DNA from: Haliotis rubra
Lineage: Eukaryota
Assembly (NCBI RefSeq): GCF_003918875.1
Contig: NW_025765137.1
Coordinates: 186,001 to 250,000, forward strand
Direction of reading: 5' to 3'
DNA length: 64,000 bases
Shown: positions 20,514 to 64,000 of the stretch, one piece after another
Layout of the letters: each line of letters opens with the position of its first letter
Position numbering within the stretch: the first letter of the stretch is position 1
Made by a program: the position numbers and the translations under genes
Notes under the pieces: model-generated
What the model saw: only the letters and a program-made list of their open reading frames with translations
Database searches by the model: none
What the model was told of the DNA's origin: nothing

Positions 20514-21011
20514 TCAACATATATATGTTGTCACGATGTAGTCGTTGAAGTCGCCAGCTCTTGGGACGTCAGGAGTGTCATCCATGGCTTCAATCCAAGT
20601 GTCTTGGACCGCGGCTTGAGGAAGTAGAGGTAGTCCAGCTGCTCTCCTGATCCACTTGGTGACTTCGGGGTTTTCCTTGTAGGCAACAGCTAGTCCAAGA
20701 TCCTGAACCGTCCTCCAGATGGCTTGACAGAAATGGAAGAAACAGCCCTTCACGTCAGCAGTGGGAAATTCTGTTTCTATGGCGTGGATTGCTGCTAGCT
20801 CAAAATCGGTCTGGATGCAGGCAGGATCAAGCGGTCTGTTGAGTCTCTGCTGAACTTCATCCTTGAGCAATCGGAAGAGTCTGGAGTAGGTTGTTGTCTG
20901 GCGGTCCGGAAGAAGGGCGAAGATGAGGGGATATGTTGAGCTGCCACGTCTTGCATGGATGATGTATACTTGATTCCACAGTGCAGGACAGGCTGTGAAA
21001 GTTCCATCCAT
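20514..21011 (-). pseudogene. MULE (Mutator-like) transposase fragment
   Basis: MDGTF...QVYIIH...PLIFALLP...Y.RLF...IQTDFE.A...A....FP...VKGCFFHFCQAIWR is the MULE DDE core with the CxxH motif; truncated at both ends. Confidence 0.9.
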
Positions 21012-21113
21012 GTAGAGGTTATAAATAACATCATCGTTACCGACCTACATAACTACATTCACGGAGTTGACTCTCGTACAAGAGGATAATCTAATAACAA
21101 CATTGCACAAATA

Positions 21114-23707: not shown

Positions 23708-26700
23708 CTACATATTTCCTGACTGTGTGAAATAATCTGGCTCTGGCTCAAAGACAGGACTGATGATGCTTTTTGACCCCACTGGTGTTCTTGGAGTGGG
23801 GCTCAGAACTTCTGCAACCTGGGAGATCTCTTCATTCAGAGTGATCTCCCCTGACAGTGGCCGGTTCCAAGAATCCTCATAAGGGTTCTGGATCTGCTGC
23901 TTTCTTGAACCTTTCATTTCCTGAAAATAGAAATGTGAAAATATTGCAATAATCACATAGATATTCCACAAGGTACAAATGGATAGAATAATACACAATA
24001 TACATAAAGCACATATTTTTTTCAGCCAATGAAAATATTTCACCTTCATAAGATGACCAACGAAAAAGTGGGATAGAATTGACCTTCATTAACACATGCT
24101 TGTTGTAAGAAACAACTACTGGGATTGGGTAGTGAAGCTTCTGACTTGGTTGATGCATGCCATCAGTGCCAAATTGATGAGTTAGATGTTCATCATGTCA
24201 GCCTCTGATTCAAGACATAAAACAACAAAAACGCTTGCCATCGAGCTGAGAGAAACATGGAATAAAAACAGTGTAAATACTGTAGAATTATCATCTACAA
24301 AGGCACTAATATTTAACAAATAAGTGTGGTTTCCTAGGAATTGTCTCCAAATTATAAATACCCTGCAGAATGTTGCCAATGGCAACACATTCCATCGCTA
24401 TATTGCACTTAGCTGAGATATGGAATTCATTTCACTGACAGCTCTGACTAATGACTTGGAAAACCTATGTAATTTCACATAAGGTTCTGTGAAGCCTACA
24501 AATAACAGATTGCTTTACAAATATTCTAAGCCAATATATAAATATAATAAATGGTGAAAGATTGATTGAAATGAAGGAGTTCAATTACAACTGAACACAG
24601 GAATGTTACTACATATGTGTGTCTGTGTCTGTTTGTATGTGTATGTATATATGTATATTTCATAATTCAGGACCCGTGAAGATCCAGTCTTCAACAACAC
24701 ATGCTTGTCCTAAGAGGCGACTAGCGGGATCGGGTGGTCAGACTTGCTGACTTGTCACCGTATCCCAACTGCACAGATCGATGCTCATGCTGTTGATCAC
24801 TGTATTGTCTGGTCCAGACTCCATTATTTACAAACTGCCGCCATATAGCTGGATTATTGTTGAGTGCGGCATTAAACAACCAACCAATCATAATTCAGGA
24901 ACTGTGTTGCTTTTAAGGCTAGCTGTTTTTAAGTGAACAAAAACATCTGGAAATGTAATGTAACTGAAACTGAACTACACACAGGAAAATGTTTGAATCA
25001 CACATGACTGGTATGGAAAATCTCCGAAACATTACACTTTCAGAACAAAATGAAATCATAAGATAGAAACTATGTCGATATCTCTATTGTACGAGGACCC
25101 GTGAAGATCCGGGGTAGAATAAGTCTTCAGCAACCCATGCTTGCCACAAAAGGCGACTATGCTTGTTGTAAGAGGCGACTAATGGGATCGGGTGGTCAGG
25201 CTCGCTGACTTGGTTGCCACATGTCATCGGTTCCCAATTGCGTAGATTGATGCCCATGCTGTTGATCACTGGATTGTCTGGTCCAGACTTGATTATTTAC
25301 AGACCGCCACCATATAGCTGGAATATTGCTGAGTGCGGCGTTAAACTAAACTCACTCACTCACTATTGTACGAGACAGGTTGATTGCAACATTACTTTGT
25401 GAAAATACATATATCTATGTCCTGATCCAGAAAACGTTCATAGCATTACGACTGATTGTAATTCTATACTTTATCTTGGGATTACGGATGAAGTAGTGCT
25501 ACAAATTCTTTGATGATGGGGTCCGTGGCTATCGAGTTAGACTCAATAAGATTCATCAGATATTTAGTCTGGTACATCACAAAAACAGGACAAGTCTATC
25601 TGATTCATTACTAATCACTGACCGATGGGACAGAACGAATTCTTCTCTGATCAGGAGTGGTGGTACCACAGGTGGGGTCAGGGCGTCCACCATAGATTAC
25701 CCATGATGCACCTGAATCCTGGGAATGTCGCCGGAATGGTTCATCCTGTACAGTAAAACAAGTCTTCTTGAAATAATAATAATGTGAAATATTTTCAAAA
25801 TGAAAATATTTAAAGAAGAAACTGTCAAATCATTCATTTAATTTTTTTTAATTTCACAAAACAAAATTTATAAATTTTAATATTAGTTTATATAACATGT
25901 TATACTGAAATGATCAAATAGGGCCTGGGGTTACTTGTTTCTCATTAAACCCATAAGAAGAAAAAAACCACACACACAATTTTCTGCAAAACTTACACTA
26001 TGAAGTAAAGCCAGAATTCAACCAAACATAAATGCATGTAAAAACTCACCAAGGAAAGCTCATCTCCATCAGAATCCTGCAACCAATAGCATGTATGTTA
26101 TTAATCTCTTCACAGACATTGCATTTCTATCAAGCTTTAGTATTGAATGGCAGTTAATGTCTCTAATTAAAGCGTGTGTCAGTATCACACAGAGATGTAT
26201 TGCTGGCATACTACGATTTGAAATATTAATCAATACACTTTACACATTGCCCAACTTTACACCAGTTATGAGTCATACTGGATCGGAATTATCAAATTCA
26301 GAAACTAGCTCTGTCAATAATCTGTACAATGAGAGTCACCCTTTCCCTGGAGGTGATCCTCAATCTTGTAACAGGGGCTGATGACAATCAAATCATTGAC
26401 ATTATTTAGATTTTTTTTTTTAATTGGTAAAAAAAATATTAAAAAATATCAGAAATTAGCAGCTGATACCACTGATCGATTAAGCTGTCAGCTTATATGT
26501 ATCACGTTCTGACCACAGCAAAAACAAGCAAAATGGCAACAATGACAAAGTTGTAAAAAATGTGGGGATGAATTAAAATGGGTCCATTTCAGGCTTAAAA
26601 ACATGATCAGAAAATTGCTGATGTCATCACTGTTCATACACTGTGACTCTCCTGTGAAATATACAGCAGGAACCAAACATTTAAATGTGGCAGGTTTTAT

Positions 26701-27057
26701 AAATTACAGATGAACAACAATGCACATGCAGTGGCCATAAAATTTCCGAATAGGGATTCAAACGACAGATCTGATTCGAAGTTGGACGCCTTGTCCACAT
26801 GACCAAAGACGTTAACCCTGTCAGCATAAGAATATCTTTTATGGGATGACCCCACGCCCTGCTCAACACATAATATATTGTGGTACACATTGTAATAAAA
26901 TACTTATCCATTGACCAAAATGGTCACTCAGAATAAACATCTTTACTGCATTACCTGGTAAGCCTGGTTTACAAAAGCAGTGTCCTTTCCTTCACTACTA
27001 GTCTGGCTACCGGCCCGGCACCTCAGTTTCTTGAAACATGTGGACCACTTCAGACGG
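23708..27057 (-). CDS. Giant protein, exons 42-45: cytoplasmic tail including a 27-nt microexon at 26050-26076
   Basis: RLKWSTCFKKLRC...FVNQAYQ | DSDGDELSL | DEPFRRHSQDSG...VPS | EMKGS...NPYEDS...PEPDYFTQSGNM*; phases match. Confidence 0.7.
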
Positions 27058-30000
27058 CTGAAAGGTGAGAGAGTGAGTTTTTAGCAACCTACCTGCAAAA
27101 TCACTGCAGCGGACATGAGAAATGGGCTTCACACATTGCACCCAAGTGGGGAATTGACCCTGGGTCTTTGGCGTGACAAGCGAACACTTTAACCACAAGG
27201 GTACCCCACCACCAAGGTGAGTAAGAAGCTGAGTATATTATTTTACTTATATCATAATGAATGAGATTTGAAACCAAAATCATATGTTCCTGGCATGCCT
27301 AAGGTATTGGGGGAAAAAAAAGAGAGACAGGTGCACCCACATTCTTTGGTATAGAGTGTTGCTTCTAACATTGATCACTGGATTGCCTAGTCTATTCATG
27401 ATTTTTATAGGCATCATCAAGCATGAAAACAAGCAAGTAAAACATTTCGTGGGATTGACAACTCAACTTACCCACGTTTGACCATAAAGATGTACCATGC
27501 CAGTACTGATATTATGACAAGCAGGATCACTGCCAGAACTATCAGCCCGATCATCCACGACTCAAAGCCATCACAGTTCGGCTTGTTTTCTGGACATGCA
27601 CAGTAGTATCTGTTGACATCGTTATAGCAGGTATATGGCCAACTGCAAGGGCTGCTGAAGCACTCGTCCACATCCTGCTCGCATCGACTCCCCGTCCAGC
27701 CCGGTGCGCATGCACAGGTGTAGTAGCGGTCAAAACTTTCAGCCCTTCGCTGGTCGTTGCATGTGTACAGACTCTCGTTTCTGCCTGCAGTCAGATAACA
27801 GTTAATGTTTTTATATTTTAACAGACCTGTGATCTGGGTTATAAGATCTTCATCATTCTGAACTTACATTAGCATGTTCCTCATTCGGAACTTACATAAG
27901 CGCATTCAGTTGCTCTGAACTCACATAAACATGTTAGTCATTCTAAATTACATGAGTGTGTTCAGTCGTTCTCAACTAACATAAACATGTTAGTCATTCT
28001 AAATTACACGAGTGTGTTCAGTCGTTCTCAACTAACATGAAACCCATGAAGATCTAGGTTAGATCTTCAGTAAACCATGCTTCTTGGCAATTAACGGGTT
28101 TTGGGTGGTCAGGTTCGCTGACTTCGTAGACACATGTCATTGTATCCCAATTGCGTAGATTCATGATCATGCTGTTGATCACTGGATTGTCTGGTCCAGA
28201 CTCGATTATTTACAGACCGCTGCCATATAACTGGAATATTGCTGAGTACAGCATAAAACTAAACTCACTCACTCGCTCACTTGCTGAACAAACATGAACA
28301 TGAGGTTCTTGAGACGGGTTTACTCCCAAAAGTTAGGCGGCTGATTTTTTTTGCTGGCGCTTTGGTGCCTGACTCATTTGGTGTCATTTTACCTGATGAA
28401 GGGGCAAGGATTAGCCCAGAAACGTTGAAGAAAAAGAAGTTGACATCCATAATATTTTGTCTTAAACATGAACATGTTCAGTCGTTCTGAACTTACTTGA
28501 ACATGTTCCGTCGTTCTGGCAAGGCCTGGCCATGACAGCCAGTCTGACTGTGATGACATCGGAGTAGACTCCCGCCTTATCCTGAGTGTACATCCGGACC
28601 TCGTCGTACCCAGTGTAACCAGTGTCTGGGATGTACTGGAATGTTCTGTATATCCAGCTGACTGCAGTGGGGGAGTGAGGCAGAGACAAGTTGGAGCAAA
28701 GGATGCCAGTCTGGAAGAAAGTTGTGGCATGGAACATGGGTGGGAAAACAGGAAAAAGGTGGAATGATAGGTGAAATGGTGTTTAAACTTGTGTTCCAGA
28801 TATTTTCACTAATACAAGTGATATGCCGACATGAGTGTGTTGCTGCTTGTACTTTTCCTTCTGAGATATAACATGGCTATGCTACTGAGACACTAAATCC
28901 ATATCATATGTTGTTATGCTTCAATTACATCCCTCATTTTGAAAGAGGGAAGCTTAATATAATAAACTCAGGTTATCAAGTGTTCGACTAAATGAGCAAT
29001 GATCCAAGCTTTGGTGGATGATGTACACCTGTAGCCAAGTCACACATTGCTATCATCCAACCCTCCTTAAACTGCTGAAGTCAGCATCAGGTGCCCAGGA
29101 TCATTACCCTGGACCTACAACAGGCAGGTCAATATCCTAACCAACCCGTGAAGATCAAGGTTAGAATTGATCTTCAGTAACTCATGCTTGTCGTAAAAGG
29201 TGATTGATGGAATTGGGTTGTCAGGCTGGCTGACTTGGTTGACACGTGTCATCGTATCCCAACTGAGTAGATCGATGCTCATGCTGTTGATCACTGGACT
29301 GTCTGGTCCAAATTTGTTTATTTACAGACTGCTGCCATATAGCTGGAATATTGCTGAGTGTGGCGTAAAACTAAACTCACTCAATATCCTTACCGTTTCT
29401 GCCGAGCAGTTTGGCACCTGTGCTGACTCGTCATCATATGTGAGCGTCCCATTGCCGGGCTGGGTGAAGTACATTGTCAAATTCTCAGCAGGGTCAACGT
29501 CATAAGCACCGAACATCCACTCGTAGGTGATGGAGCTGTCGTTGACAAGGTTTTGCTCGATTAGTGTCTGCAAATACAAAGACATACATACAGGGACATG
29601 ATTCACATAAATCTCAAGGAATGTATTGTGTGAATGCCATCAACAATCCCGGCAAAATTATTTTTACCAACAATACATTGGTTCTACAATATACAGGTTT
29701 GAAAAGAATGTGTGATTTGTTTGTGGCTACCGCTGGACTCTGGACACCAGAAACGGGGTTCACACAATGTACCCATGTGGGGAATCGAACCCGGGTCTTT
29801 AGCAGACATTTTAACAATTAGGCCCCTTGTTCTGAAATGAAGATAAAAAAATGGTTGGCACAATCTCATGTATTTTGTCGTTAACCATGCCTTGCCCCAC
29901 ATCCACTCACCATGATAGGCGCAGTTGGGTCAGCCAGAATGAGGCTAACTCCTCCACTGAAGGCGAACACGCTGGGAGCATCGTTGTCTGCTGTGACCTG

Positions 30001-33000
30001 GATGGCGATGATGACAAGGGTGGAGGCGGCGGGGATGTCCACAACATCCACCTCGTAAAGGACGACCGGAACAGTAAAGGTTCCGTAGTAGTTCAAGGCC
30101 GGTGTGAAGGTCAAGCTGGAAGGAACATGAAGCTGCATCAGACATGGCGTGAGTGAGTGAGCTAGTTCTTGAGTGAGATATTATTTTTCTATCAGTTACT
30201 TTGAAAATATTTCCACGATAAATATATGATACCGTAGCAATTTTTACTCACATTACATCATCTCCTACTCACACCATCACATCCCCTACTCACACCATCA
30301 CCAGCCCCTACTCACACCATCATCAGCCCCCACTCACACCATCATCAGCCCCCACTCACACCACACCAGCCCCCACTCACACCATCATCAGCCCCCACTC
30401 ACACCATCATCATCCCCCCACTCACACCATCATCAGCCCCCCCTCACTCACACCTCACACCAGCCCCCTACTCACACCATCATCAGCCCCCTACTCACAC
30501 CATCATCAGCCCCCCACTCACACCATCACCAGCCCCCTCACTACACACCACCACCATCCCTCACTCACACCATCACCAGCCCCTACTGACACCATCACCA
30601 GCCTCCCACTCACACCACCACCAGCCCTACACTCACACCACCACCATCCCTTTTATCACTTCACACCATCACCAGCCCCAACTCACACCACCACCATCCC
30701 TCACTCACACCATCACCTACACCACACCATCACCAGCCCCCACTCACACCATCACCAGCCCTAACTTCACACTCACATCCACCACCATCCCCCCACTCAC
30801 ACCACACCAGCCCTAACTCACACCACCACTACCATCTCACTCACACTATCACCAGCCCCTAACTCACACCATCACTCAGCCCCTACTCACACCATCATCA
30901 GCCCCCACTTCTCACACCATCACTATCCTCACTCCACCTATCACTCAGCTCCCTACTCACACCATCACCAGCCCTAAATCACACCATCATCAGCCCTCAC
31001 TCACACCCACCACTTATCCCTACTCAGCACTCACACCATCACTAGCTCTACCACACCATCACCACTCCTTCACACTATCATCAGCCCCACACTCACACCA
31101 TCACCAGTCCCTCTATCACACCATCACCATCCCTTCACACCATCACACCATCATCAGCCCCCACTCACACCATCACCAGCCCCTCATTCACACCATCACC
31201 AGCCCCCACTCACACCATCATCAGCCCCCCACTACACACCATCACAGTCCCCACTCACACCATCACCAGCTCACTCACACCATCACCAGCCTCTACTCAC
31301 ATCCCCTTCCACACCAGCTCACCACTCCACCCCACTCTCACACCATCACCAGCCCCCACTCACACCATCACCAGCCCCCACTCACACCACACCAGCCTTA
31401 CTCACTCACACCATCACTCCTCACACTCACACTCACCACCAGCCCTAACTCACTCACATCACCTACTCACACCATCACCAGCCTTAACTAACACACACAC
31501 CATCACCAGCCCCTACTGACACCACACTAGCTCTCATCCTTACCACACACAATCACCAGCCCCTACTCACACCACACCAGCTCCAACTAAAGCACACACC
31601 ACCATCCCTTACTGTACCTCTCTACACACCAGCTCCTAACACTCACACCACACCAGCCCCTACTAACACCACCACCACACCAGCCCTATCCTTTTTACTT
31701 CACACCACACCAGCCCCTACTCACACCACAACCATCCCTACTCACACCATCACCACCAGCCCCTACTACACACCACAACCATCCCAACTCCACACCACCC
31801 TACTACACAGCCCCTACTCACACCACCACAAGCCCCAACTCACACTCACACTCAGCCCTTACTAACACCACCACTATCCCTTACTCACACCACACCAGCC
31901 CCTACTTCACACCACACACCCTTTCTCTCACACCACACCAGCCCTAGTCACACCACACACACCCCCTAACTCACACCACCACCAGCCCCTACTAACACTA
32001 CATACCAGCTCCAACTACTACACCATCACACCAGCCCCTACTCACACCCACACCAGCCCTACTCACACCACACACACCACAACCATCCCTTACTACACAC
32101 ACCACACCAGCCCCCTACTTTCACACCACACACCAGCCCCAACTCACACCACACACACCATCCCTACTTCACACCACCACTCACTCTTACTTTACCTACT
32201 CACACCACACCAGCCCCTACTAACACCACACAACCATCCCTTACTCACACCACACACCAGCCCCTACTACACCACACCAGCCCTACTACACCACACCACC
32301 CCTACTACACACACTACACTATCCCCTACTCACACCACACCAGCCCCTACTCACACCACACCAGCCCCTACTCACACCACACCAGCCCCTACTACCACAC
32401 CATCCCCTACTAACACCATCACCAGCCCCTACTCACACCACACACCAGCCCCTACTCACACCACACAGCCCCACTCACACCCAGTGCCCCTACTCACACA
32501 ATCACCAGCCCCTACTCACACCACCACCATCCCTTACTCACACCATACCAGCTCCAACTCACACCACACCAGCCCCAACTCACACCACACCCAGCCCCAA
32601 CTCACACCACACCAGCCCCTACTGACACAATCACCAGCCCCTACTCACCACCCTCACACACCATCACACCACACCTCACCATCCCTTACTCACACCATAC
32701 CAGCTCCAACTCACCACCACACATCCCCTACTCACACCACACCACCAGCCCCAACTAACTCACCACACCATCACCAGCCCCTACTCACACCACTCACCAG
32801 CCCTACTGACACCTCACCACCAGCTCCCAACTAACACCACCACACCAGCCCCTTACTGGACACTACACACCACCAGCCCCCCTACTAATACCATCACCCC
32901 CATCACTCAGCCCCTACTCACACCACACCAGCCCCTACTAACACCACACACCATCCCTTACTCACATCACACCAGCCCCTACTCACACCACACCAGCCCC

Positions 33001-54000: not shown

Positions 54001-57000
54001 GGGCAAAATGGTAACTATCCAGAATTGTCTCCCTTGTCATCTTTCTTTTCTTGGATTTCTTTTGTCTTGGGAGTTCCAGCATCATGAATCATTATCATCA
54101 AAACGATACATATACATATGGCAAAGTGGTCCTGTTTGGACTTAATTGGATGATAAGCTGATACACTCTTCATAATCTTAACAACATTACCTGACAATCC
54201 CTGTCTCTTCATCAGTGAAGTCTGCCCAGGCAACAAGAACTGTTGACAAGGACTCTTGACAGGTGGCGTCAATTCTCATGCAGTCTGTAAAAGAAGGATT
54301 AAGTGTTGGAGGATCCCAGGAGTGTTTAATTGTTGAAGTTAGCCGTTAAACCCTAAGTTCCGTGTGACACATCATCATTTTTCAACATGGGAAATTATAA
54401 AGAAGTTCTGTCTTTGCCAAGTGGCGTTTTAACAACATGTTCAGTTTGATAATGCAGAGTTAAAGACAGTAAAGCCAAAGTTGAACAAGAATCAAATCCA
54501 ATCAAACCTATATTTTTATGCATTTGTAGTGAACTGTGAAAATTATATGCTCAGAAAAGAGGGTTTTGGACTCCCATGGTTTCAGTGTAACACACATAAA
54601 ATGTCTTTATAGTTTTCCTGTATTCATACCAACGATCCTCACATACCTTCCCCTGAGTCACAACTGTAAGGATTCATTCTTTCAGTCAAGATGGGATCTG
54701 TGACGTTGATGATGTAGGCTGACCCAAGCTCTACCACTGTCCCCTGTGTTGGAGGTGTGTTGTCAACGTTGATGCCGTTAGAGATGGCAGACGCAGTCAT
54801 CCCAACAGTGTTTTTGGCTGTAACCTTGGCATAGTACGTCTGACCATGGGTTGCCTTTCGTGACAGACCTTTAGGAAACACAAAATTATTGTGATAAAAC
54901 TTTCATTATTATTAGTACAGTCACTATGATTTTAAAGCGTTCTTAAACATGTGAATGATGTTATTTCTATGTACCGTAGGTCAGATACTTGTTCACGTGG
55001 CCGGACAGCTTGACAGGTGCGAGGACATCTTCGAGACCTTCATGGGATCCCACAGTGAAGGTGAACTCCTGTACCTCACTCTGTGCATCATAGAAACCTT
55101 CCCATGTGCATTCTAGGGCAGACAGTGGCTGAAAACAAAACACATTCATGAAGAAGATGGCCCTTGTGCATCCCCATGCATGCAAGCACACACCTACACA
55201 CACACACGAGTCATGATATGGCTGAAATATTGCCGATGCAACTTAAAATCTTAACTCACTCACTACACACACGTGTGGAATACCATAAATTAACTACAAT
55301 TTTGGCATAAACCTTGATACTGGAATTTTTTTGTACAAAGATATTTACAATTGTGCCAGTGTTTTTTAAAATCAACTTTTACACCATGGCTTAGGCCATA
55401 ACATAGTAATTAATAGATTGTCATTGCTTCTCTAATATGAAACACCCAAAATCCCATCATTACTGTATGTAAGTCCTTACAGGCAAATACAATCAATATA
55501 CATGTGTTGTCTTGCTTCCTATACATTAAGAGTGAGTGAGTGAGTTTAGCTTTACGACGCATTTTGCAATATTCCAGTAATATCATGGCGGGGGACACCA
55601 GAAATAGGCTTCACACATTGTACCCATGTGGGGAGTCGAGCCCGGGTCTTTGGCGTGACAAGCAAATGCTTGAACCACTAGGCTACCTGACCACCACCCT
55701 GTGCATCAAGAAATGTACCTAATTACCCAGCATTAAATATTCACACAATATTTATCAAGGATTACTGTTCAGTGACGCTTTCAACAGTGTTTTGAAGCTT
55801 ATTTGTAAATTCTTTACACCAAATTTCATTTGCAAAATAATATATTTTGAACTCAGGAATAAGTCAAATTAACAAGAACAAAATAGGGCATGAGAAAGAA
55901 AAATATCATGTGAGGCACACCTGTATGAAACCTGGACACTTCAGCACACCCTCTGTTGGTGGAGTGGTATCAATCACCAATGAAGGGGAGATAATACTAG
56001 ATGACAGCCCAAGCTCATTCTCGGCAATCACAGTCACGATGTTGGATTTGCCTGAGTCAAAGAGAAAAGAAGGAATTGTTTCATTGTAAATTAATAATAC
56101 TAACAACTCAGATAACTGTTACTGATACGCTGCACTCAGCAATATTCCAGCTATATGGCGGCGATCTCTAAATAATCAAGTCTGAACCAGACAATCCAGT
56201 GATCAACAGCATGGGCATCTATCTACTCAATTGGGATACGTAGACATGTGGTCACCTGATCCTGTAGTCTAGATCCTAGTTGCCTCTTACGACAAACATG
56301 GGTTCCTGAAGATCAATTCTAACCTGGATCTTCGTATAATGAGGTGAACATCATTCACACTAATCAATCTACTGTCTATCAAATCAATACTCCTGGCTGC
56401 ACTTACCAATCGAAACAATAGGTGGTGGAAAATCGAAGAGGCCAGAGAATGAGTTTTAGGACACTGAGCAGAGTTCCTCCCAAAGCAATACAAGAGTCAA
56501 AATGTCCACAACAGAACTAGCCAGTGCTAACCTTTGGCATTGGGACTGACCCCTGTGGGCAGCGCCCCATCCCCAGATGGTAGAAGGTCCACCTCTGTCC
56601 TGGCCTGGACATCTGCACCATGTGGGTAGGTCCCCACAGAGAAATACATCTTCTTGACTGGACTCTCCGTGTCCTCTACTCTCCATGATGTGGTCATGGA
56701 ATCTACCTCTGTCTGGTAGAGCAGGGTGCTTGGCGTCAGCATGGACTTGTTGCTCTCGGAACCAAAACTTGGTGAAGAAGAACAGTGTTTATGCAAATAT
56801 ATATGATACTATTATATTTTTAGGTGCTTCTGATACTAATATTTACATTGTAAAGCTGATAATAATTATTATTCCTGGTTTGTTGGAGTGAGTGAGTAAG
56901 GTTCAACTCTTCCATTCCAGCAATATCAAGGCAGAGGACACCCAAATGAGGTTCACACATCGTAGCCAAGTGGGGAACTGAACTCTTCAGTTGCTGAGTT

Positions 57001-60000
57001 AACACTTTGACCACACCTCACTACCCGGGGTTGTTGGCCAATTATGTAGATTCTTTTAAGCGTCTTCTGTCAGTGAGTGTGAGTTGCCCTTTCATTTCAC
57101 CAATGCATCCTGGTGGCTCATTTTTCACATGTGAGAACACCTTTTGAAGATTAACAGACATCGGTTTCCATCAGTCATAACAAACCATATTTTTATCAAC
57201 ACTTAATCTAACCTACTCATGGTTTTATTTTGGTTTATAAGTTTTTCTTGAAGATTTATCAACACTTAAACATAATCTACTCATTGTTTAAAATAATGTA
57301 ATTTTTTAAGTAAAATTGATATTTTTATAATTATCCTGACTCATGATCTTTGCTTATCTCCCTTTCCCTTGCGAATGGTAGTGGAACACTTGAATCCCTT
57401 GAAGTTCCCGATTGATATAAAAATACACTCACCCACGAGTTTGCCCTTTTCCCAGCGCAAACAGCCAGGTGACCTGCCTTACTTGTCACTCTCTCCCTTA
57501 TAAATTACTTTTGAAGATAAAGTGCAGTGGAAACTTTGACCAACATACCTTTCAAGGTTAATAACTGGGGGAGTCTGATCAACAACAAATCCATCTGATG
57601 TTGACTCGAGGATGTTCCCGGCATTTGTGATGCCTCTGATGGTGGTGTAGTAGCTGATGCTGGGGACAAGGGGCAGCACGGCCTGGCCGAACCCGTAACT
57701 CAGAGAACCTGGAACAGGAAGGGATGATGTGGTAAGTATCCCATCTGTGGAGGCAACTTGGCTGTGTCATCTGAATATCAGCTGTTTCATGACAACCGCT
57801 AATTGCCATGGGCTTTTGAGTAAGTTTGGTTAGAACAGTATTTCAGATCACGATCTGCCATCTCGCATTTGGTAGATGCAAGTCTTACCAATTTTGGTGA
57901 GCATAAGTTTGCTGAAAACTCAAGTTCATAATCTGGGCATATGTGGGATTTGAACCAACAGGAATCAGACATGTGGGACTCAGATGATGTTAAACATATA
58001 CTATGTACTGCTTGTGAATATTTATCCATTTCTTATGGACTCTGCTTTTAATCCAGATGATTGGGAAATGCGTTTGGGGAGGATATTTTGATAAGTAAGG
58101 AAAAAAATAGACTTGACAAATGGGATTGGTTGGTCAGACTTGCCGACTTGGTTGATGCATGTCAGGTCAGTTCATTCCAATTCTGTAGATCGATACTAAT
58201 GATATCAATTTTGTTTAATGTGTTTGTTGTTTAATGGCCCACTCAGCAATATTCCATCTATATGACTGTGGTCTGTAGATAATCCAATCTGGACCAGACA
58301 TCCAGTTATTCACGATACCAATCACTTTACTGTCTTGCGTGTAATGTGGGTGGGGTAGCCTAGTGGTTAAAGGCGTCCCTGCTTGCGTCACGCTAAGACA
58401 TGGGTTCAATTCCACACATGAGTACAATGTGTGAAGTGGAATTTCTGGTAAACCCTGATATGCTTGAATATTGCTAAAAGCGGTGTAAACCAAACTCGGT
58501 GTAAAACTCACTCACTTGTATGCAACCCCTTATTTACATACTGATGTCACAAAGACAGAATATTGCTGAGCATGGGGACAATCAATAAACAAACAAACTG
58601 GGTTGAAAATCCTTGTCTGCTGCAGTTGAATGTTACATGAATTACCAGGGACGTTTGACTGTTTCTCCTCATGAACAAGACCAGCCTTGATAAAGGGTTG
58701 TACTTCCTCGCCACCAGGTGTTGTCCCTACAGCCCAGTCGTAATATGTCACGCCATGCTCTTGACTCTCAAAACCTGCAAACTGTACAGTCATAACTCCC
58801 GCGTCCTTCTGGTAGTCGATGTCAACACCAATACTTTGTGATGCTGTCTCTGTGGAGTCAGCACCATCAATGACAACACCTGTAACAAAAAATATGTCAT
58901 AACATGTTTCGAGTAAAGTTCTGTAAACAAAAAATGGGCATTTGGTACAAAACAAAAAGTTGTCACTCATCACTCTTCTGTGAAACGTATCCCTGTGATG
59001 CGTAAAACACAACACAGTTCAGATCTATTCCATATAACAAACTTCTTTGAGTGGCATTTTTAGAAGCTGGGAAGTACATTAGACAAACTTTATGGAAAAC
59101 AGCTTCTTTATTTTGTGAGTGTCAGATTCTTGTCCCGTTGTCATTGGTTGCACTCTTGAAATAAAGAAGTTGCTATCCATTAAGTTTGTCTATGTTGCAA
59201 ATGTTACTAGTGTCAACTTGCTGAATCAACATCTAAGCTTTGGACAATCGACTTTTCATGTGCTTGTGATGCATGCAGACTGAGCTCACCTTTTTGCTAA
59301 CACTTGATACATTTGCTATTTATAAGTGATCTATAAATCCATTTATGATATAGTTAGAATCATACAATGGAGATTTCTTGTACAAATGTTTTCATGTCAC
59401 TTTTCAATTTGAAAATGAATGTGCAATATCATAATACATATCCATATATCCTGTACCTGGCTTATCTTCATCAACTACCCGAATAGGATTGGAGGTGATG
59501 ACCTCACTGGTCAGCCCAGCACCATTGGTGGCCTTGACAGTGACATAGTACAGAGGGGTCATTTTCTCAGGGTCGGTCAGGGTCAAGGTCAGACCATTTA
59601 TATACTTGTCCTTCTCTGCACCAACATCCATCCAGTTCAGCACATCAGTTCCACCTGTAAATAAAGTACACTGATAATCCGAGAAATTGAATGTATTTTT
59701 AAGAATCTTTTTCAATATTGTAAGAGGAGACTGACGTGATCGGGTGGTAAGGCTCGCTGACTTGGTTGAGACATGTCATTGTATACTAAAGATCGATGCT
59801 CATGTTGTTGATCACTGGATTGTCTGATTCAGACATTATTATTTACAAATCACCACCATGTATATGGAAGATTGTGTTAAACAAAGAAAAACTTTTTCAA
59901 TATGTATTTTAATTTATGTGATAATAAACAAAATATCTGGTGTGCTCCTTTTGTGCAATTAAGCTATGTGGAATTGAAATGACATGCACAATGGTTGAAC

Positions 60001-63000
60001 AAACGATCTATACTTCAAAATATTTGACAGAATATTATAGAAGCTATAACCTGAAAAGTGAGAGTTAGTTTTCCTCTGAATCACCTGGTTTGTTTTAGAA
60101 CCTATATGCTGTTTCCACTAAAATCGTGCAGGGCTCCAGATAATATTTCAACATCAGGAGTACGTACTCCTTATTGTTCAATATAGGAGTACTGGAAAAA
60201 CTAAAGAGTACATTTAGAATACTGAATGGAATTTAATGGCGTATCAGTAATCTTGTGTTTTGTTTGATATATGCACCACAGCATTGCTAGTCTTGTGTAA
60301 ATAGGTCAATAAACAATAAAACAATACTTTTTCATATACGTACGTCTTAAATGACTCTAACACCGTACACCATTGCTGTGGTGCGTATCTGCTACGTTTT
60401 CTAATTTATTTCCTACCGTATCGTGCATACTTTTTATCCGTACATATGCCAATACGGCCCTTATCTGGAGCCCTGTCATGACTATTTGTTTTATATCGGG
60501 GAAAATGGGATGTATCCTCTCACACAGCAATGTATTTCCCTTCAAGGCAGGATACATAGTGTTTTATAGACATCATGTGAACCAATCAGATCTCAGCAAT
60601 CTGACATGGAGGTGAGATAATTTAGTTTAACTGGACATGACGCAGGTGACAGACTGACCTTCAGTAGTTCCTACAGCAATAGAGTATGAGCTGATGCCAC
60701 TTTCATGATCGGTGGCATACCACGTGGCCATTATACCACTGTTGTCAGACTGGATGACGTATCCATTGATCAACTCCTCAGTGCTGCCGGAGAAGATGCC
60801 AACATACACCCACTTCATCTGCAACCATAATGAAAGAACAGGTAACAATTGCAGCGCTACATACACACCTTTCCTTCATTATAATGATAAACAAAGATGT
60901 ATGCTGGTTTGGATTTCATTCATTCTGTGGACCGATGCCCTTGTAGTGCATGCTGAGGTTTGTGTCAGGCTGCTCTAGCCAGTGATTGATGGAGTGACCA
61001 TGTCTCGTGGGTGAGTGAGTGAGTGAGTGAGTATAGTTTTACGCTGCTTTTAGCAATATTCTAGCAATATCACAGCAGGGGACACCAGAAATGGGCTTCG
61101 CACATTGTGTCTATGTGAGGAATCCAACCCAGGTCAACGGTGTGACAAGTCAACCCTTTAACCACTAGGCTACCCCACCGCCCCCTACCCTACATGGAGC
61201 ATCATGGAATCAAAGTGACTTCTGTTAGCACTTTGAAGTTTTCAGAAGCCAGCAACAGTGTGAAGCCAGTAAGAACCAATAAAAGGATGAAAATAATCAG
61301 GGACACAACTTTGTACAGCAAACCGTGTTGAAGTAGATAGGTGTCATTGTTCATTTTTGTTTCTTGTGCAATATGTTCACGTTTTTTTCAGCTGAACTCT
61401 TAACTTGCCTGTGCATGCGTTTATGACATGTGCCCTTGTGTGCTCACCTTTTTGCAAATACCATGTATGATTAATATCTGACAGTGTATTCATAACACAC
61501 GATATACACACGAAACTGTTTTGTCATGTTTATTTACCTAGGTTGCAGTTCCATGATTTGTGTCAGATCAAGTTTGGGCAGTATACTCACCTCAGGTTTC
61601 GAGTTGTCCAGAAGGACGCCATTGGTGTCATATGTTGCCACAGCTCCAGCCCTGTTGACGGCCCCTACTCTGATGCTGTAGAGAGCTCCAGGCTTCATGT
61701 CAAGTCCCGTGTGACTCACGCTGGTGCTGAGTGGATCAGTGATGGTGTCCCACCCCGTTGCTGAAGGGGCAGTAAAGGGTATTATTCAAATGTAACAGAT
61801 TTTTTCAGACATACAAAACCTTCACCTTTTTTTTATCTTTAAACACAGGTTAGTACGGGTGTCCTGTCAGAAATACACAGCATTGTTTGTTTGTTTGTTG
61901 TTTAATGCCACATTCAGCAATATTCCAGCTATATGGAGGCAGTCTGAAAATAATTGAGCCTGGACCAGACAATCCAGTGATCAACAATATGACTGACTGA
62001 CTGAGTTTGGTTTTACGCCGCTTTTAGCAATATTCCAGCAACATCACGGCAGGGGACACCAGAAATGGGCTTCACACATTGTACCCATGTGGGGATTCGA
62101 ACCCGGTCTCTTGGCGCGGACGAGCCAACGCTTTAACCACTAGGCTACCCCACCGCCCCATCAACAATATGAGCATCACTGCTTTGTGTAAGAGGTGACA
62201 AATAGGGTTAGGTGGTCAGGCTTGGTGACATGCCTGTCATCATACCTTAAAGGGGAGGGTAATTGCACACAATATCAACCACTGATTTTAGTGGACCAAC
62301 GCAACCTTGAATTATTTATCACTTATTTATTTATCAAAATTTGAAAAAATCATATCATGATCAAAATATAATTGATTATTTATGTGCAATCACTTTACCC
62401 ATAAACTATTTTTATAATGAACAAGCTTAAAACAAACTGACTGAATAACAAATATCATTTTCATCCCAGGCTCTTGCTTACATTTTAGTAAGAAAGAATA
62501 TAACTTTAAAAAAAAAGAATTAACAGTACCTTTGATATTGTTATAACCGCAGTTTACTGACTGCATTGATAGATTTGGTATTACACACTTACCTGGGTGG
62601 ATTTGATGCTTGTTTCCCTGGTATCTTTGATACACTTGATATTTGAAGTGGTCAATACCAGATTCATCATCATAAAATCGGAAGTTGGCCACAACGGTGG
62701 TAGTGGAGAACTGGAATTCAGAAAATATTATTAGCTGATTTAACACCACTGTTATGAGTTACACATTAACAACACAGTGTTTTACACCTGTACCAGTCCC
62801 ATGGATTCTGGGTAATTGGTACCAAGCAACCTCCATATGTGGAAGTTGTAAGAGTTGACAAAATGGATCGTCTGAACACATAATAACTTGATGCTCATTG
62901 TGTGTCAATGTATGGTTTGTTTGTTTGTTGTTTAACGCCGCACTCAGCAAACATTCCAGCTATATGGCAACAGTCTGTAAATAATCAAATCTGGACCAGA

Positions 63001-64000
63001 CACTCCAGTGATCAACATCATTTGCATTGATCTCTGCAAATGAGATACAATCAGCTAGCCTGACCACCCAATCCCATTAGTCATCTCTTACGACAAGCAT
63101 GGGTTGCTGAAGACCAATTCTAACCTGGATTTCCCCCTATAGTCATTGTGGGATGTTGCCCATATTATCGACCACTGGTCCAGTCCAGATTTTCCCTCTA
63201 ACAGACCACTGTCATAGAGCTTGAATATTTCTGAGTGTGCCATTAAGGATAAAACAATCAAAAGAAGCCCTGAAGACATCCTCTCACCTGGAAATCTGCA
63301 TCCTTCCCTGCTTCTGATCCGTCTCCAAGGAATGCCATCCTTGGCGGTGTAAGGTCCACGACAAAGCCATCAGTGGAGTCGTCGATGCTGCCAAGGGCAT
63401 TGTTGACAGCCCGCAACTTTGTCTTGATGACATCACGATGACTCAGATGGAAGTTGTGCCACTCGACCTCACTCATGTCCTTTGAGAGTGTTCTCCAGCT
63501 CCTCAAGATCTCGAAGGCGTCAGACAGGTTCCTGGAGGAGAGTCAAGGTCAAAGAGACACCCATTAAGATTTAAACATTAAATCATACAATATATTTCCA
63601 TGCTGCAAAATGTTCGAACCAAAATGTTTCCCCAAAATAATTGTTCACTGGACATGGTGGATGTCTTGAATGTTTTGTTGTGTTCAAGAAAAGAACCCCA
63701 GAAATGGGCTCCACACATTGTACCAATGTGGGGGGAATCGAACCCGGGTCTTTCGGCATGATGATTGAACACTTGAACCACTAGGCTACCCCACCGCCCC
63801 AAATGTCGATCAAGTAATCAACACAAACCTTGCCCTGAGTACTTCCACGGCATATTCTCTGATGCTAGACTCTGGGTCGGAGTAGCCCCTCCATTGAGTA
63901 GCCACTGTCGCCACGTGTTGGCTGTATGCTGTGTCGGTGAAGTTCGCACGTCGTCCATCCACCACCTCTCCAGCCACTGGAGGGGTCAGGTCAACAATCA
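23708..64000 (-). CDS. Giant single-pass membrane protein (FN3-like repeats, GH16-like insert, ZU5/GAIN-like domain, 2 cadherin-like repeats, 2 EGF, TM, cytoplasmic tail); 5' end lies outside the window; 45 exons, about 2,770 aa here
   Basis: Hand-spliced model; every intron is GT-AG and all phases are compatible. Exons: 63829-64000, 63288-63531, 62593-62710, 61591-61760, 60659-60818, 59457-59654, 58646-58879, 57549-57708, 56532-56767, 55921-56051, 54975-55128, 54647-54868, 54191-54284, 53818-53938, 53229-53374, 52222-52355, 51218-51481, 50498-50776, 49812-49960, 47325-47466, 47057-47160, 46497-46700, 45723-45897, 44505-44776, 43952-44107, 43276-43501, 42288-42448, 41013-41333, 40090-40258, 39257-39459, 38440-38620, 37410-37580, 36338-36745, 35489-35788, 34955-35046, 34235-34394, 33503-33620, 29911-30115, 29394-29567, 28497-28710, 27472-27784, 26955-27057, 26050-26076, 25623-25745, 23708-23920 (stop TAG). 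The cytoplasmic exons are the least certain. Confidence 0.88.
24671..24887 (+). mobile_element. Retroposon family B
   Basis: Starts GACCCGTGAAG; TSD TCATAATTCAG. Confidence 0.88.
25096..25362 (+). mobile_element. Retroposon family B (duplicated-core subfamily)
   Basis: TSD CTATTGTACGAG (25084-25095, 25363-25374). Confidence 0.92.
27472..27784 (-). CDS. Giant protein, exon 41: EGF, calcium-binding EGF and transmembrane helix
   Basis: YTCACAPGWTGSRCEQDVDECFSSPCSWPYTCYNDVNRYYCAC...WMIGLIVLAVILLVIISVLAWYIFMVKRG; acceptor tgcag, donor gtaagt. Confidence 0.9.
27855..28040. repeat. About 29-bp tandem repeat related to the exon 40 donor region
   Basis: Units catgttcagtcgttctgaac(t/c)tacat; the same unit overlaps the real donor at 28473-28496. 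Confidence 0.7.
28041..28280 (+). mobile_element. Retroposon family B
   Basis: Starts AACCCATGAAGATC; diverged core. Confidence 0.85.
28303..28463 (+). mobile_element. Penelope-like element terminal fragment with minimal hammerhead ribozyme core
   Basis: CTGATGA(28393)-GGGC/GCCC stem-GAAACGTTG(28419-28427), then AAAGAAGTTG..CCATAA tail; 13-bp flanking duplication AAACATGAACATG (28290-28302, 28464-28476). Confidence 0.7.
28497..33620 (-). CDS. Giant protein, exons 37-40: two cadherin-like (bacterial Ig/Big_9-type) repeats and start of EGF1
   Basis: NDPP...EED...LSGVDPDGD...NGLLTFTPALNYYGTFTVPV...VTADNDAP...AYDVD...PGNGTL...FQYIPDTGYTGYDEV...PCQNDGTC. Confidence 0.85.
29143..29380 (+). mobile_element. 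Retroposon family B
   Basis: TSD TCAATATCCT(A/T)ACC overlapping the exon 39 donor. Confidence 0.88.
30258..33502. repeat. About 20-22-bp C/A-rich intronic satellite (sense strand GTGAGTAGGGGCTGGTG(ATG)GT) starting at the exon 37 donor
   Basis: Units CCAGCCCCTACTCACACCA(TCA/CA) over 3.2 kb; the centre is degenerate. Confidence 0.95.
34235..40258 (-). CDS. Giant protein, exons 29-36: last FN3-like repeats, RKKR furin site, ZU5/GAIN-like domain
   Basis: DGFYVDTTPP, YQWSIGTTPGG and YDFCVGS, then GNTRKKRA, ITVQTPDGMMPG...MPGPLTVTFPF...LLHWDP..QKW....TC...ITVKVC...SHETLFVV. Confidence 0.85.
34446..34612 (+). mobile_element. SINE family A
   Basis: Full-length match. Confidence 0.88.
37005..37215 (+). 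mobile_element. Retroposon family B
   Basis: Starts AACCCGTGAAGATC. Confidence 0.85.
38648..38911. repeat. Perfect intronic tandem duplication, period 134 bp
   Basis: 38648-38777 matches 38782-38911. Confidence 0.9.
39033..39160. repeat. 12-bp minisatellite, about 10 units
   Basis: a(a/g)gtacaatacc repeated. Confidence 0.8.
39538..39866. mobile_element. MITE (possibly PIF/Harbinger-like)
   Basis: TIR GGCCAGACCAAATTTATTTCTTGTTTTAC / GTAAAACAAGAAATACAATTGGTCTGGCC; flanks TTA and TAA. Confidence 0.75.
41013..44776 (-). CDS. Giant protein, exons 24-28: ConA-fold/GH16 (lichenase-like) domain inserted in an FN3-like repeat
   Basis: GGEYEFSIKSAKGDGKVVTSVLFWDGP and DLNIDPSASYHAYSINF...VHMDGELI...IP...TKLYMGVWN resemble GH16 lichenase strands by eye; no EIDIE motif. 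Confidence 0.65.
41563..41776 (-). mobile_element. Retroposon family B
   Basis: Sense start GACCCGTGAAAATCC at 41776. Confidence 0.8.
42883..43148 (+). mobile_element. Retroposon family B (duplicated-core subfamily)
   Basis: TSD TCTACTGATCAAC (42870-42882, 43149-43161); inserted in an older antisense B copy. Confidence 0.92.
45106..45419. mobile_element. MITE inserted in a retroposon remnant
   Basis: Imperfect TIR CCGTTCAGTATTTATGGCTAGTGGGG / CCCCACTAGCCATAAATTATGAACGG. Confidence 0.7.
45723..64000 (-). CDS. Giant protein, exons 1-23 in window: tandem FN3-like repeats
   Basis: Recurrent unit (V/I)D.TPP..G.V.DG...D.D.Q......W.GF.D.ES.I..Y...VGT.PGG......L.....YY.TV.A.N.AGL.....SDG, e.g. IVDLTPPVAGEVVDG, GFVVDQTPP, YYVTVKATNGAGL, YYEVAVGT, YDWAVGTTPGG. 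Confidence 0.9.
46304..46470 (-). mobile_element. SINE family A
   Basis: Full length; flanked by a cataatcatgtaag duplication. Confidence 0.88.
48075..48497. mobile_element. PIF/Harbinger-like MITE inside an older SINE-like element (about 47715-48620)
   Basis: TIR GGGCGCGTTGTTCAGC / GCTAAACAACGCGTCC, CTG TSD; the host carries CAGGTACCCATTTTCTGCTGGGTGAACAGAGG and an (AAT)n tail. Confidence 0.7.
49134..49531. mobile_element. Tc1/mariner-type MITE
   Basis: TIR TACTACTCACACTTTGCTAAGGATCA / TGATCCTTAGCAAAGTGTCAGTAGTA, TA on both sides. Confidence 0.8.
49585..49805. repeat. About 75-bp tandem repeat, 3 copies, abutting the exon 19 donor
   Basis: gatttat(t/c)gtgattgaa(t/c)ggtgatttct(t/c)acac.attgttttactaaatacatgtg repeated three times. 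Confidence 0.85.
52638..53053 (+). mobile_element. Retroposon family B interrupted by a family A SINE
   Basis: Starts GACCCGTGAAGATC; the tail resumes after 53018. Confidence 0.88.
52841..53008 (-). mobile_element. SINE family A nested in a family B element
   Basis: TSD TATAGCTGGA (52831-52840, 53009-53018). Confidence 0.9.
55531..55699 (-). mobile_element. SINE family A
   Basis: Full-length match. Confidence 0.85.
60129..60475. mobile_element. MITE with hAT-like termini
   Basis: 15-bp TIR CAGGGCTCCAGATAA / TTATCTGGAGCCCTG; no clean 8-bp TSD. Confidence 0.65.
61010..61185 (-). mobile_element. SINE family A
   Basis: Full length with a long (GAGT)n tail. Confidence 0.88.
61993..62159 (-). 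mobile_element. SINE family A nested in a family B remnant
   Basis: TSD ATCAACAATATGA (61980-61992, 62160-62172). Confidence 0.9.

What the first reader, a model, noticed from the sequence alone, without database searches (positions are those of the whole stretch)
23708..64000. Giant, probably uncharacterised adhesion or pattern-recognition receptor with an unusual domain string
Seen: 45 phase-compatible exons give over 2,770 aa with about 14 FN3-like DxTPP repeats, a GH16-like insert, two basic cleavage sites, a ZU5/GAIN-like domain, two cadherin-like repeats, EGF plus calcium-binding EGF, one TM helix and a tyrosine-motif tail. Knowledge: long FN3-like repeat proteins occur as uncharacterised models in marine invertebrates, but I know no named receptor with this order of domains. 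Inference: a very long, processed and sheddable glycan-sensing or adhesion rod coupled to endocytic and actin adaptors.
Basis: partly seen in the sequence, partly recalled or inferred. Interest (0 to 1): 0.82.

Follow-up and report, generated by a model that had tools for sequence, protein, structure and literature searches.

The report
Giant abalone surface protein, C-terminal third
This stretch holds the last 45 exons of a real, transcribed abalone gene for a roughly 7,500-residue cell-surface protein (FN3-like rod, an inactive sugar-enzyme fold, a cleavable ZU5/GAIN-like domain, cadherin-like and EGF domains, one membrane anchor) from a family conserved from molluscs to amphioxus that I found named or studied in no paper or database entry searched.

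Summary
On the minus strand, 64000 to 23708, I rebuilt a 45-exon, all GT-AG model of 2,772 aa. It is 87% identical and colinear with the C-terminal 2,808 residues of a 7,549-aa Haliotis rufescens protein, and colinear at 33-45% with giant proteins of bivalves, limpets, a nemertean, sea stars, a crinoid, acorn worms and amphioxus. All are labelled 'uncharacterized'. Transcript contigs from three samples confirm the last seven junctions, including a 27-nt micro-exon.

Tests support most domain calls:
- 14 FN3-like repeats.
- A GH16 beta-jelly-roll nested inside repeat 12, without the catalytic acids.
- One strict furin motif (RKKR) in a disordered loop of a ZU5/GAIN-like domain.
- Two cadherin-like (Big_9) domains, then EGF, cbEGF, a TM helix and a tail.

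Corrections:
- The window holds only the last ~37% of the protein. The orthologue adds M23-like, SAP and PAN domains upstream.
- The second 'basic site' is a conserved structural motif, not a loop.
- The HE|T 'autoproteolysis' motif is not conserved.
- The tyrosine motifs in the tail are genus-specific.

Glycan sensing, shedding and adaptor coupling remain inference. This scan has already noted paralogues of this family elsewhere in the genome.

The parts
23708..64000 (-). 45 coding exons (5'-truncated by the window edge) encoding the C-terminal 2,772 aa; stop codon at 23708-23710
   Evidence: colinear with P0234 at 87%; RNA contig junctions for the last 7 exons
45823..63992 (-). FN3-like repeats 1-11 (about 110-130 aa each, ending in DxTPP-type linkers). 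Unit 10 (47111-50525) is diverged
   Evidence: repeat HMM, domain E 1e-18 to 1e-36; unit 10 E 0.003; Pfam fn3 in relatives
39407..45822 (-). FN3-like repeat 12, split by a nested insert
   Evidence: removing aa 1340-1685 restores a full-length repeat-HMM match (positions 1-114, E 9e-13)
41103..44768 (-). GH16-like beta-jelly-roll (exons 24-28) with a Cys-rich, partly disordered sub-insert. The strand that carries the catalytic residues in GH16 enzymes reads CGLQIF (43280-43297)
   Evidence: AlphaFold model of the paralogue piece, pLDDT 78.6; the top 50 Foldseek PDB hits are all GH16, E 2.5e-10, TM by target up to 0.75; the family profile hits lichenases, E 0.005; no E-D-E in any of 35 relatives
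36459..39400 (-). FN3-like repeats 13 and 14
   Evidence: repeat HMM E 8e-35 and 5e-21
34296..36458 (-). ZU5/GAIN-subdomain-B-like beta-sandwich (exons 33 part, 34, 35, 36 part)
   Evidence: model pLDDT 83.9, pTM 0.84; VIA Z 9.0 ankyrin ZU5, 8.5 CD97 GAIN, 7.0 CARD8 FIIND and CELSR1 GAIN; Foldseek ZU5 E 2e-3
36372..36383 (-). RKKR, the only strict RX[KR]R motif in the model, in a disordered loop
   Evidence: the loop has pLDDT below 50; a strict motif sits at this position in 19 of 33 relatives
28537..34262 (-). Two cadherin-like (Big_9 type) domains, including the DNDAP linker motif. They are interrupted by the 3.4-kb satellite intron
   Evidence: family profile hits CDHR2, CELSR1 and PCDH15, E 4e-5 to 1e-3; Pfam Big_9 in 24 of 28 relatives and in the orthologue
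27567..28527 (-). EGF-like domain followed by a calcium-binding EGF (DVDEC...CYNDVNRYYCAC)
   Evidence: Pfam EGF families E 2.5e-4 to 0.014, below the gathering scores; Cys pattern read directly
27480..27557 (-). Single 26-residue hydrophobic transmembrane segment followed by KRGR
   Evidence: read from the sequence; conserved in relatives
23711..27479 (-). Cytoplasmic tail, 157 aa over 5 exons, including the 27-nt micro-exon 26050-26076. Motifs NQAY, NPYEDSW and PDYF
   Evidence: all junctions seen in RNA contigs; conserved with the H. rufescens orthologue only

Best explanation
The window holds the C-terminal third of a single ~7,500-residue type I membrane glycoprotein of blacklip abalone. 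It is the orthologue of Haliotis rufescens LOC124111176. It belongs to a family with no functional name or paper found here, seen in molluscs, a nemertean, echinoderms, hemichordates and amphioxus.

Shown:
- 14 FN3-like modules form a long stalk.
- An enzymatically dead GH16 jelly-roll is nested in a loop of module 12.
- Next to the membrane lie a ZU5/GAIN-like sandwich, two cadherin-like domains, EGF, cbEGF, one TM helix and a fast-evolving tail.

Inferred mechanism:
- A furin-type convertase cuts at RKKR in a disordered loop. That loop seems to lie after the first two strands of the ZU5/GAIN-like fold.
- The huge outer chain would then stay attached only by strand complementation, as in Notch S1, SEA or GAIN junctions, and could be shed by force or further proteolysis.
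- The dead GH16 module would act as a glycan-binding site on the rod.
- The tail carries no conserved signalling motif. Any signal would therefore more likely come from shedding or from the ectodomain than from fixed adaptors.
For: Single gene:
- One colinear alignment over 2,768 aa with P0234 at 87%, and with about 40 other models from five phyla.
- Spliced RNA contigs in three runs confirm the last junctions.

GH16 fold without catalytic acids. Nesting inside repeat 12.

ZU5/GAIN-like fold. ZU5 alignments start at model residue 102 and GAIN alignments at about 71-75. Both are upstream of the low-confidence RKKR loop at 122-128.

Dibasic site 1 is strict in 19 of 33 relatives. Site 2 is strict in 18 of 33 and sits before the last strand. 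Alignments to cleaved GAIN chains end at model residue 273, where the site-2 loop begins.

Cadherin-like domains. EGF and TM.
Against: - No cleavage, shedding or glycan binding has been measured.
- The structural models are of a 63%-identical paralogue piece, not of the window protein itself.
- Z scores of 7-9 are in the range where only a common sandwich arrangement may be shared (note).
- 14 of 33 relatives lack a strict site 1, so cleavage is not universal.
- The placement of the loop inside the fold comes from alignment ranges, not from coordinates.
- The 5' two thirds of the gene lie outside the window.
- Only 7 of 44 junctions have RNA support here.
Confidence: 0.55

Rival explanations
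1. It is a passive structural component of the apical matrix or glycocalyx: a long anchored rod with no sensing role. The GH16-like and ZU5-like domains serve only as spacers, and the dibasic site only matures the protein.
For: The tail is unconserved outside the genus. There are 30 N-glycosylation sequons in the ectodomain. The repeat architecture resembles bacterial and animal structural adhesins. Each genome holds many paralogues.
Against: The nested GH16 module and the Cys pattern of the membrane-proximal cassette are conserved from molluscs to amphioxus. This suggests selection on more than length.
Confidence: 0.25
2. It is a membrane-bound pattern-recognition receptor for beta-glucans. 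It would work like the secreted betaGRP/GNBP/LGBP proteins of invertebrates, which also use inactive GH16 domains.
For: A dead GH16 fold sits in an extracellular invertebrate protein. Orthologues carry an M23-like (peptidoglycan-hydrolase-type) domain upstream.
Against: The best sequence matches are lichenase-type GH16, and only at E 0.005. There are no data on expression or immune response. No CBM39-type glucan-binding domain was seen. No conserved signalling tail is present.
Confidence: 0.12
3. The model is an artefact that joins exons of two or more neighbouring genes.
For: RNA junctions were checked only for 23600-29590. Three exons of my first model were false and a fourth ran too far.
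Against: One uninterrupted colinear alignment with full-length models from many species. One 5,064-nt transcript contig extends about 3.1 kb upstream of 29568. Phase is kept across all 45 exons.
Confidence: 0.03

Closest known systems
Predicted orthologue Haliotis rufescens LOC124111176 (P0234, 7,549 aa) and ~7,500-aa relatives in Patella, Lottia, Gigantopelta, Mercenaria, Asterias, Acanthaster and Patiria
   Same: 87% identity and full colinearity over the window's 2,768 aa up to the C-terminus. The relatives have the same order of modules.
   Different: All are automatic predictions named 'uncharacterized' or 'hypothetical'. The H. rufescens tail has a 33-aa duplication of the NPYE(D/E)SWNRPLSGEI motif.
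GH16 lichenases and laminarinases; inactive GH16 domains of betaGRP/GNBP
   Same: Beta-jelly-roll fold and weak profile similarity to lichenases. Loss of the catalytic residues, as in betaGRPs (general knowledge).
   Different: The strand that carries E-x-D-x-E in the enzymes reads C-G-L-Q-I-F. The domain is nested in an FN3-like repeat of a giant membrane protein and holds a Cys-rich disordered sub-insert.
GAIN domain of adhesion GPCRs (CD97, CELSR1, GPR56, BAI3)
   Same: Membrane-proximal extracellular sandwich with Z 6.5-8.5. The W-x6-W-x6-C...C-x-T pattern recalls the GPS motif. The last strand starts T-x-F. A cleavable loop sits at the GPS-equivalent position in 18 of 33 relatives.
   Different: No 7TM. 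No helical subdomain A was seen. No HL|T turn: a 10-60-residue disordered loop takes its place. Cleavage, if any, is by convertase.
ZU5 domains (ankyrin, UNC5, PIDD, NLRP1/CARD8 FIIND)
   Same: Best structural match: Z 9.0, 143 residues aligned.
   Different: Known ZU5 domains are cytoplasmic (general knowledge); this one is extracellular. There is no HFS or SF|S autoprocessing motif.
Notch S1 / SEA-type heterodimeric junctions
   Same: A proposed convertase cut inside a folded juxtamembrane domain that leaves a non-covalent two-chain receptor (inference).
   Different: A different fold, and nothing has been tested.
HEG1 (automatic name of one amphioxus relative)
   Same: EGF, cbEGF, TM and a short tail.
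   Different: The window tail has no match to any PDB chain, so none to the deposited HEG1 tail peptides as I recall them, even at E 10. The ectodomain is unrelated to a mucin-like region.

Membership tests
Glycoside hydrolase family 16 | Beta-jelly-roll (concanavalin-like) fold | tested here: met
   The top 50 Foldseek hits are all GH16, E 2.5e-10, TM by target up to 0.75. The model is of paralogue P0169:4704-5090.
Glycoside hydrolase family 16 | Catalytic E-x-D-x(x)-E on the cleft strand | tested here: not met
   The equivalent strand is C-G-[LIMV]-Q-[IL]-x in 35 relatives and CGLQIF in the window. The register is inferred from flanking HMMER anchors and the strand order.
Glycoside hydrolase family 16 | Significant sequence similarity | tested here: inconclusive
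   Profile against PDB: all 11 hits are lichenases, but the best E is 0.005. Pfam finds nothing on single exons.
GAIN domain (adhesion GPCR / PKD1 type) | GPS motif with an HL|T(S) autoproteolytic turn | tested here: not met
   A disordered loop of variable length separates C-x-T from the last strand. The residue before the conserved Thr varies (E, P, D, A, S).
GAIN domain (adhesion GPCR / PKD1 type) | Subdomain B sandwich fold | tested here: inconclusive
   Z 6.5-8.5 to six or more GAIN structures and an ADGRG3 cluster in the Atlas at TM 0.44. This is a middling range.
GAIN domain (adhesion GPCR / PKD1 type) | Helical subdomain A and a following 7TM or 11TM | tested here: not met
   The modelled region has almost no helices. 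There is a single TM.
ZU5 domain | ZU5 beta-sandwich fold | tested here: met
   Z 9.0, rmsd 3.7, 143 residues aligned to ankyrin ZU5A; UNC5b Z 6.0; FIIND Z 6.5-7.0. Foldseek probability 1.00, E 2e-3. Pfam ZU5 was not hit.
ZU5 domain | Cytoplasmic location in a scaffold or death-domain protein | tested here: not met
   The domain lies N-terminal to the only TM of a type I protein, among EGF and cadherin-like domains.
Cadherin-like (Big_9 / Cadherin_4 / Cadherin_5) | Profile match and DxNDxP-type linker | tested here: met
   Big_9 in 24 of 28 relatives (best E 1.7e-13) and in the orthologue. PDB cadherins at E 4e-5. The window has ADNDAP. Single window exons gave no Pfam hit.
Calcium-binding EGF | D-x-D-E-C start and C-x-N-x4-Y-x-C-x-C | tested here: met
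   DVDEC...CYNDVNRYYCAC read in exon 41. The Pfam EGF hits are below the gathering scores.
Fibronectin type III | Pfam fn3 match | tested here: inconclusive
   Window exon: E 0.027. Relatives: 1.7e-12 (P0042) to 3e-25 (P0004), summed over repeats. No repeat was folded here.
HEG1 | Conserved cytoplasmic tail that binds KRIT1 | tested here: not met
   No PDB chain matches the tail at E up to 10. The tail is not conserved across the family.

The most novel reading that the evidence does not exclude
The membrane-proximal domain is a non-GPCR relative of the GAIN/ZU5 autoproteolytic folds. In it, the self-cleaving turn has been replaced by convertase-cleavable loops: one after the second strand, and in many relatives one exactly at the GPS-equivalent position. 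This would give a pre-nicked, force-sensitive tether on a single-pass receptor. The receptor would display a nested, catalytically dead GH16 lectin on a rod of several thousand residues. The design would be conserved from molluscs to amphioxus and, as far as the hit lists show, missing from vertebrates and ecdysozoans.
Probability: 0.2. Interest if true: 0.7.

Novelty: new variant of a known kind. Interest (0 to 1): 0.48.

Why it matters
If the cleavage model holds, the family would show how the ZU5/GAIN type of fold can serve as a releasable junction outside GPCRs, and with a protease instead of self-cleavage. That bears on the origin of the GAIN domain and on mechanosensing by shed ectodomains. 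The family is also a large, conserved and almost Pfam-blank group of about 7,500-residue surface proteins in marine invertebrates. Its nested dead glycosidase fold may be a new lectin type. For annotation, the practical result is a checked 45-exon model and a domain map for a gene that public records call 'uncharacterized'.

Tried and rejected
1. Pfam on 20 single stop-free exon stretches found only sub-threshold EGF and fn3 hits. Domains had to be tested through relatives.

2. Exons of my first model were corrected:
- 52015-51984 and 44336-44256 have no counterpart in any relative.
- 34848-34816 and the last 33 nt of exon 22 are absent from the orthologue and break the family consensus.
- The acceptor of exon 17 was moved to 51481.
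- A 27-nt micro-exon was added from the RNA contigs.

3. HEG1-like tail: no PDB match.

4. Second furin site at ILRRRV: rejected. R187, L189 and R192 are invariant inside the fold, and there is no strict motif.

5. HE|T autoproteolysis: rejected as a family feature.

6. Literature: three searches on 13 locus identifiers and one thematic search found nothing relevant.

7. Runs first looked like low-coverage DNA. Laying them showed spliced contigs, so they are transcript assemblies.

Full report
**Strand and model**

All long stop-free stretches with recurring motifs lie on the minus strand. A simple exon-chaining program, using codon log-odds and generic splice weights, gave 47 phase-compatible exons and 2,835 aa. 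The chain runs from the window edge at 64000 to a stop at 23708.

**Relatives**

I searched one repeat exon (window 58533-58838, minus) against 1.84 billion representative proteins. It found 463 proteins, many with 10-22 matching stretches. My model aligned as one colinear HSP over about 2,700 residues with:
- Potamilus (42%)
- Mya (36%)
- Branchiostoma (34%)
- the crinoid Anneissia (33%)

All of these are named 'uncharacterized' or 'hypothetical'. A few amphioxus models carry automatic names such as HEG1, CRB1, FAT1 or JAG1.

Two word searches widened the set. It now includes Mytilus, Solemya, Pinctada, Saccostrea, Mercenaria, Haliotis, Patella, Lottia, Gigantopelta, Pomacea, the nemertean Lineus, four sea stars, Saccoglossus, Ptychodera and many amphioxus paralogues. 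No vertebrate, arthropod or nematode appeared, but these lists are capped and do not prove absence.

The best match is Haliotis rufescens LOC124111176 (P0234, 7,549 aa). It is 87% identical over model residues 1-2768, which correspond to its residues 4742-7549, its very end. A same-species paralogue, P0169, is 63% identical.

The window therefore holds only the last ~37% of the protein. The orthologue's upstream part has Peptidase_M23, SAP and PAN matches. Limpet and sea-star relatives also have a vitellogenin-N domain.

**Refining the model**

Per-exon conservation and the orthologue showed the following:
- Three small exons were false.
- One donor lay 33 nt too far downstream.
- One acceptor was wrong.

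Contigs of three runs (X3, X8, X9) laid on 23600-29590 are spliced, with GT..AG introns on the minus strand, exactly at my boundaries. They also add a 27-nt micro-exon at 26050-26076. One X3 contig of 5,064 nt has a further ~3.1 kb upstream of 29568.

The final model has 45 exons, all GT-AG, and 2,772 aa.

**Repeats**

An HMM built from the first six units finds 13 units, with domain E-values from 1e-7 to 1e-36. A diverged 14th unit lies at aa 1070-1192 (E 0.003).

Pfam fn3 is marginal on a window exon (E 0.027). It is clear in relatives.

The strongest single-repeat matches are giant intron-less ORFs on metagenome contigs. These carry Invasin_D3, Big_1 or SBBP domains. The repeat subtype is therefore shared with bacterial surface proteins.

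**GH16-like insert**

- A profile of 35 relatives (A1) hits only lichenases in the PDB, with a best E of 0.005.
- The AlphaFold model of the paralogue piece has pLDDT 78.6.
- All of its top 50 Foldseek hits are GH16 enzymes, with E 2.5e-10 and TM by target up to 0.75.
- The strand that should carry E-x-D-x-E reads C-G-L-Q-I-F in the window. No relative has an acid triad there in either register.
- Cutting out aa 1340-1685 restores a full repeat match (E 9e-13), so the domain is nested in repeat 12.
- A Cys-rich, low-confidence sub-insert sits inside it.

**ZU5/GAIN-like domain**

The A2 model has pLDDT 83.9 and pTM 0.84. Structural matches are:

| Structure | Score |
|---|---|
| ankyrin ZU5 | Z 9.0 |
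| CD97 GAIN | Z 8.5 |
| CARD8 FIIND | Z 7.0 |
| CELSR1 GAIN | Z 7.0 |
| GPR56 GAIN | Z 6.5 |
| GPR110 GAIN | Z 6.5 |
| BAI3 GAIN | Z 6.5 |
| NLRP1 FIIND | Z 6.5 |
| UNC5b ZU5 | Z 6.0 |
| ankyrin ZU5 tandems (Foldseek) | best E 2e-3, probability 0.97-1.00 |

The Atlas search lists a ZU5 cluster and ADGRG3.

These Z values are middling. The case rests on the top of the list being filled almost entirely by one group of related folds.

RKKR (aa 2078-2081) is the only strict RX[KR]R in the model. It lies in a loop with pLDDT below 50, after two strands that the ZU5 and GAIN alignments appear to include. 19 of 33 relatives have a strict site there.

18 of 33 relatives have a second strict site in a variable loop just before the last strand. 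Alignments to cleaved GAIN chains stop where that loop begins, at model residue 273. From my own knowledge, GPR56 is cut after Leu382, the last residue of the aligned chain range.

The window protein lacks a strict second site. Its ILRRRV falls on invariant structural residues. The residue before the conserved Thr of the last strand varies, so self-cleavage is unlikely.

**Membrane-proximal part and tail**

- The A3 profile hits cadherin repeats in the PDB (E 4e-5) and Pfam Big_9 in 24 of 28 relatives.
- EGF and cbEGF are read from their Cys patterns, with sub-threshold Pfam support.
- The TM segment is conserved.
- Beyond KRGRLKW, the tail is conserved only with Haliotis.
- The tail matches nothing in the PDB.

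**Verdict**

- The functional part (glycan sensing, shedding, adaptors) is untested inference.
- The adaptor claim is unsupported.
- I found no paper on any of these loci.
- Earlier notes of this scan describe paralogues of the family on other DNA of this genome.

Noticed in passing
window 395-1582 (-): Intron-less 396-aa ORF with full-length GT10 fucosyltransferase domains (Glyco_transf_10 E 9e-51, N-terminal domain E 5e-21), downstream of the giant gene on the same strand.
   Followed up: partly
window 20517-21044 (-): 176-aa stop-free stretch with a MULE transposase domain (E 1e-13). Probably a transposon remnant.
   Followed up: partly
window 30264-33503: The intron between exons 37 and 38 is almost wholly a 22-bp minisatellite of about 145 copies. 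It starts at the last base of exon 37, and each unit contains a GTGAGT-like donor on the minus strand. It also produces the GC-skew trough. RNA across this junction was not checked.
   Followed up: partly
window 24600-25400, 28000-28400, 29000-29400: Intronic SINE-like elements with word depths of thousands to millions in all runs. The same element recurs as SGPD..YRPPPYSWNIAE translations all over the window.
   Followed up: no
window 26976: All three transcript contigs and one DNA contig carry a 6-nt in-frame insertion in exon 42 relative to the window. The H. rufescens orthologue is 2 aa longer at the same place. This looks like an indel polymorphism.
   Followed up: partly
P0234:7451-7483: The H. 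rufescens orthologue has a 33-aa tandem duplication of the tail motif NPYE(D/E)SWNRPLSGEI.
   Followed up: no
P0001, P0003, P0004 (metagenome contigs): The best matches to a single repeat exon are 2,750-3,400-aa ORFs with 17-19 copies of the repeat plus Invasin_D3, Big_1 or SBBP domains. Together with the lichenase-type GH16 and the Big_9 domain, three modules of this animal protein have a bacterial flavour. An old transfer is possible but was not tested.
   Followed up: no
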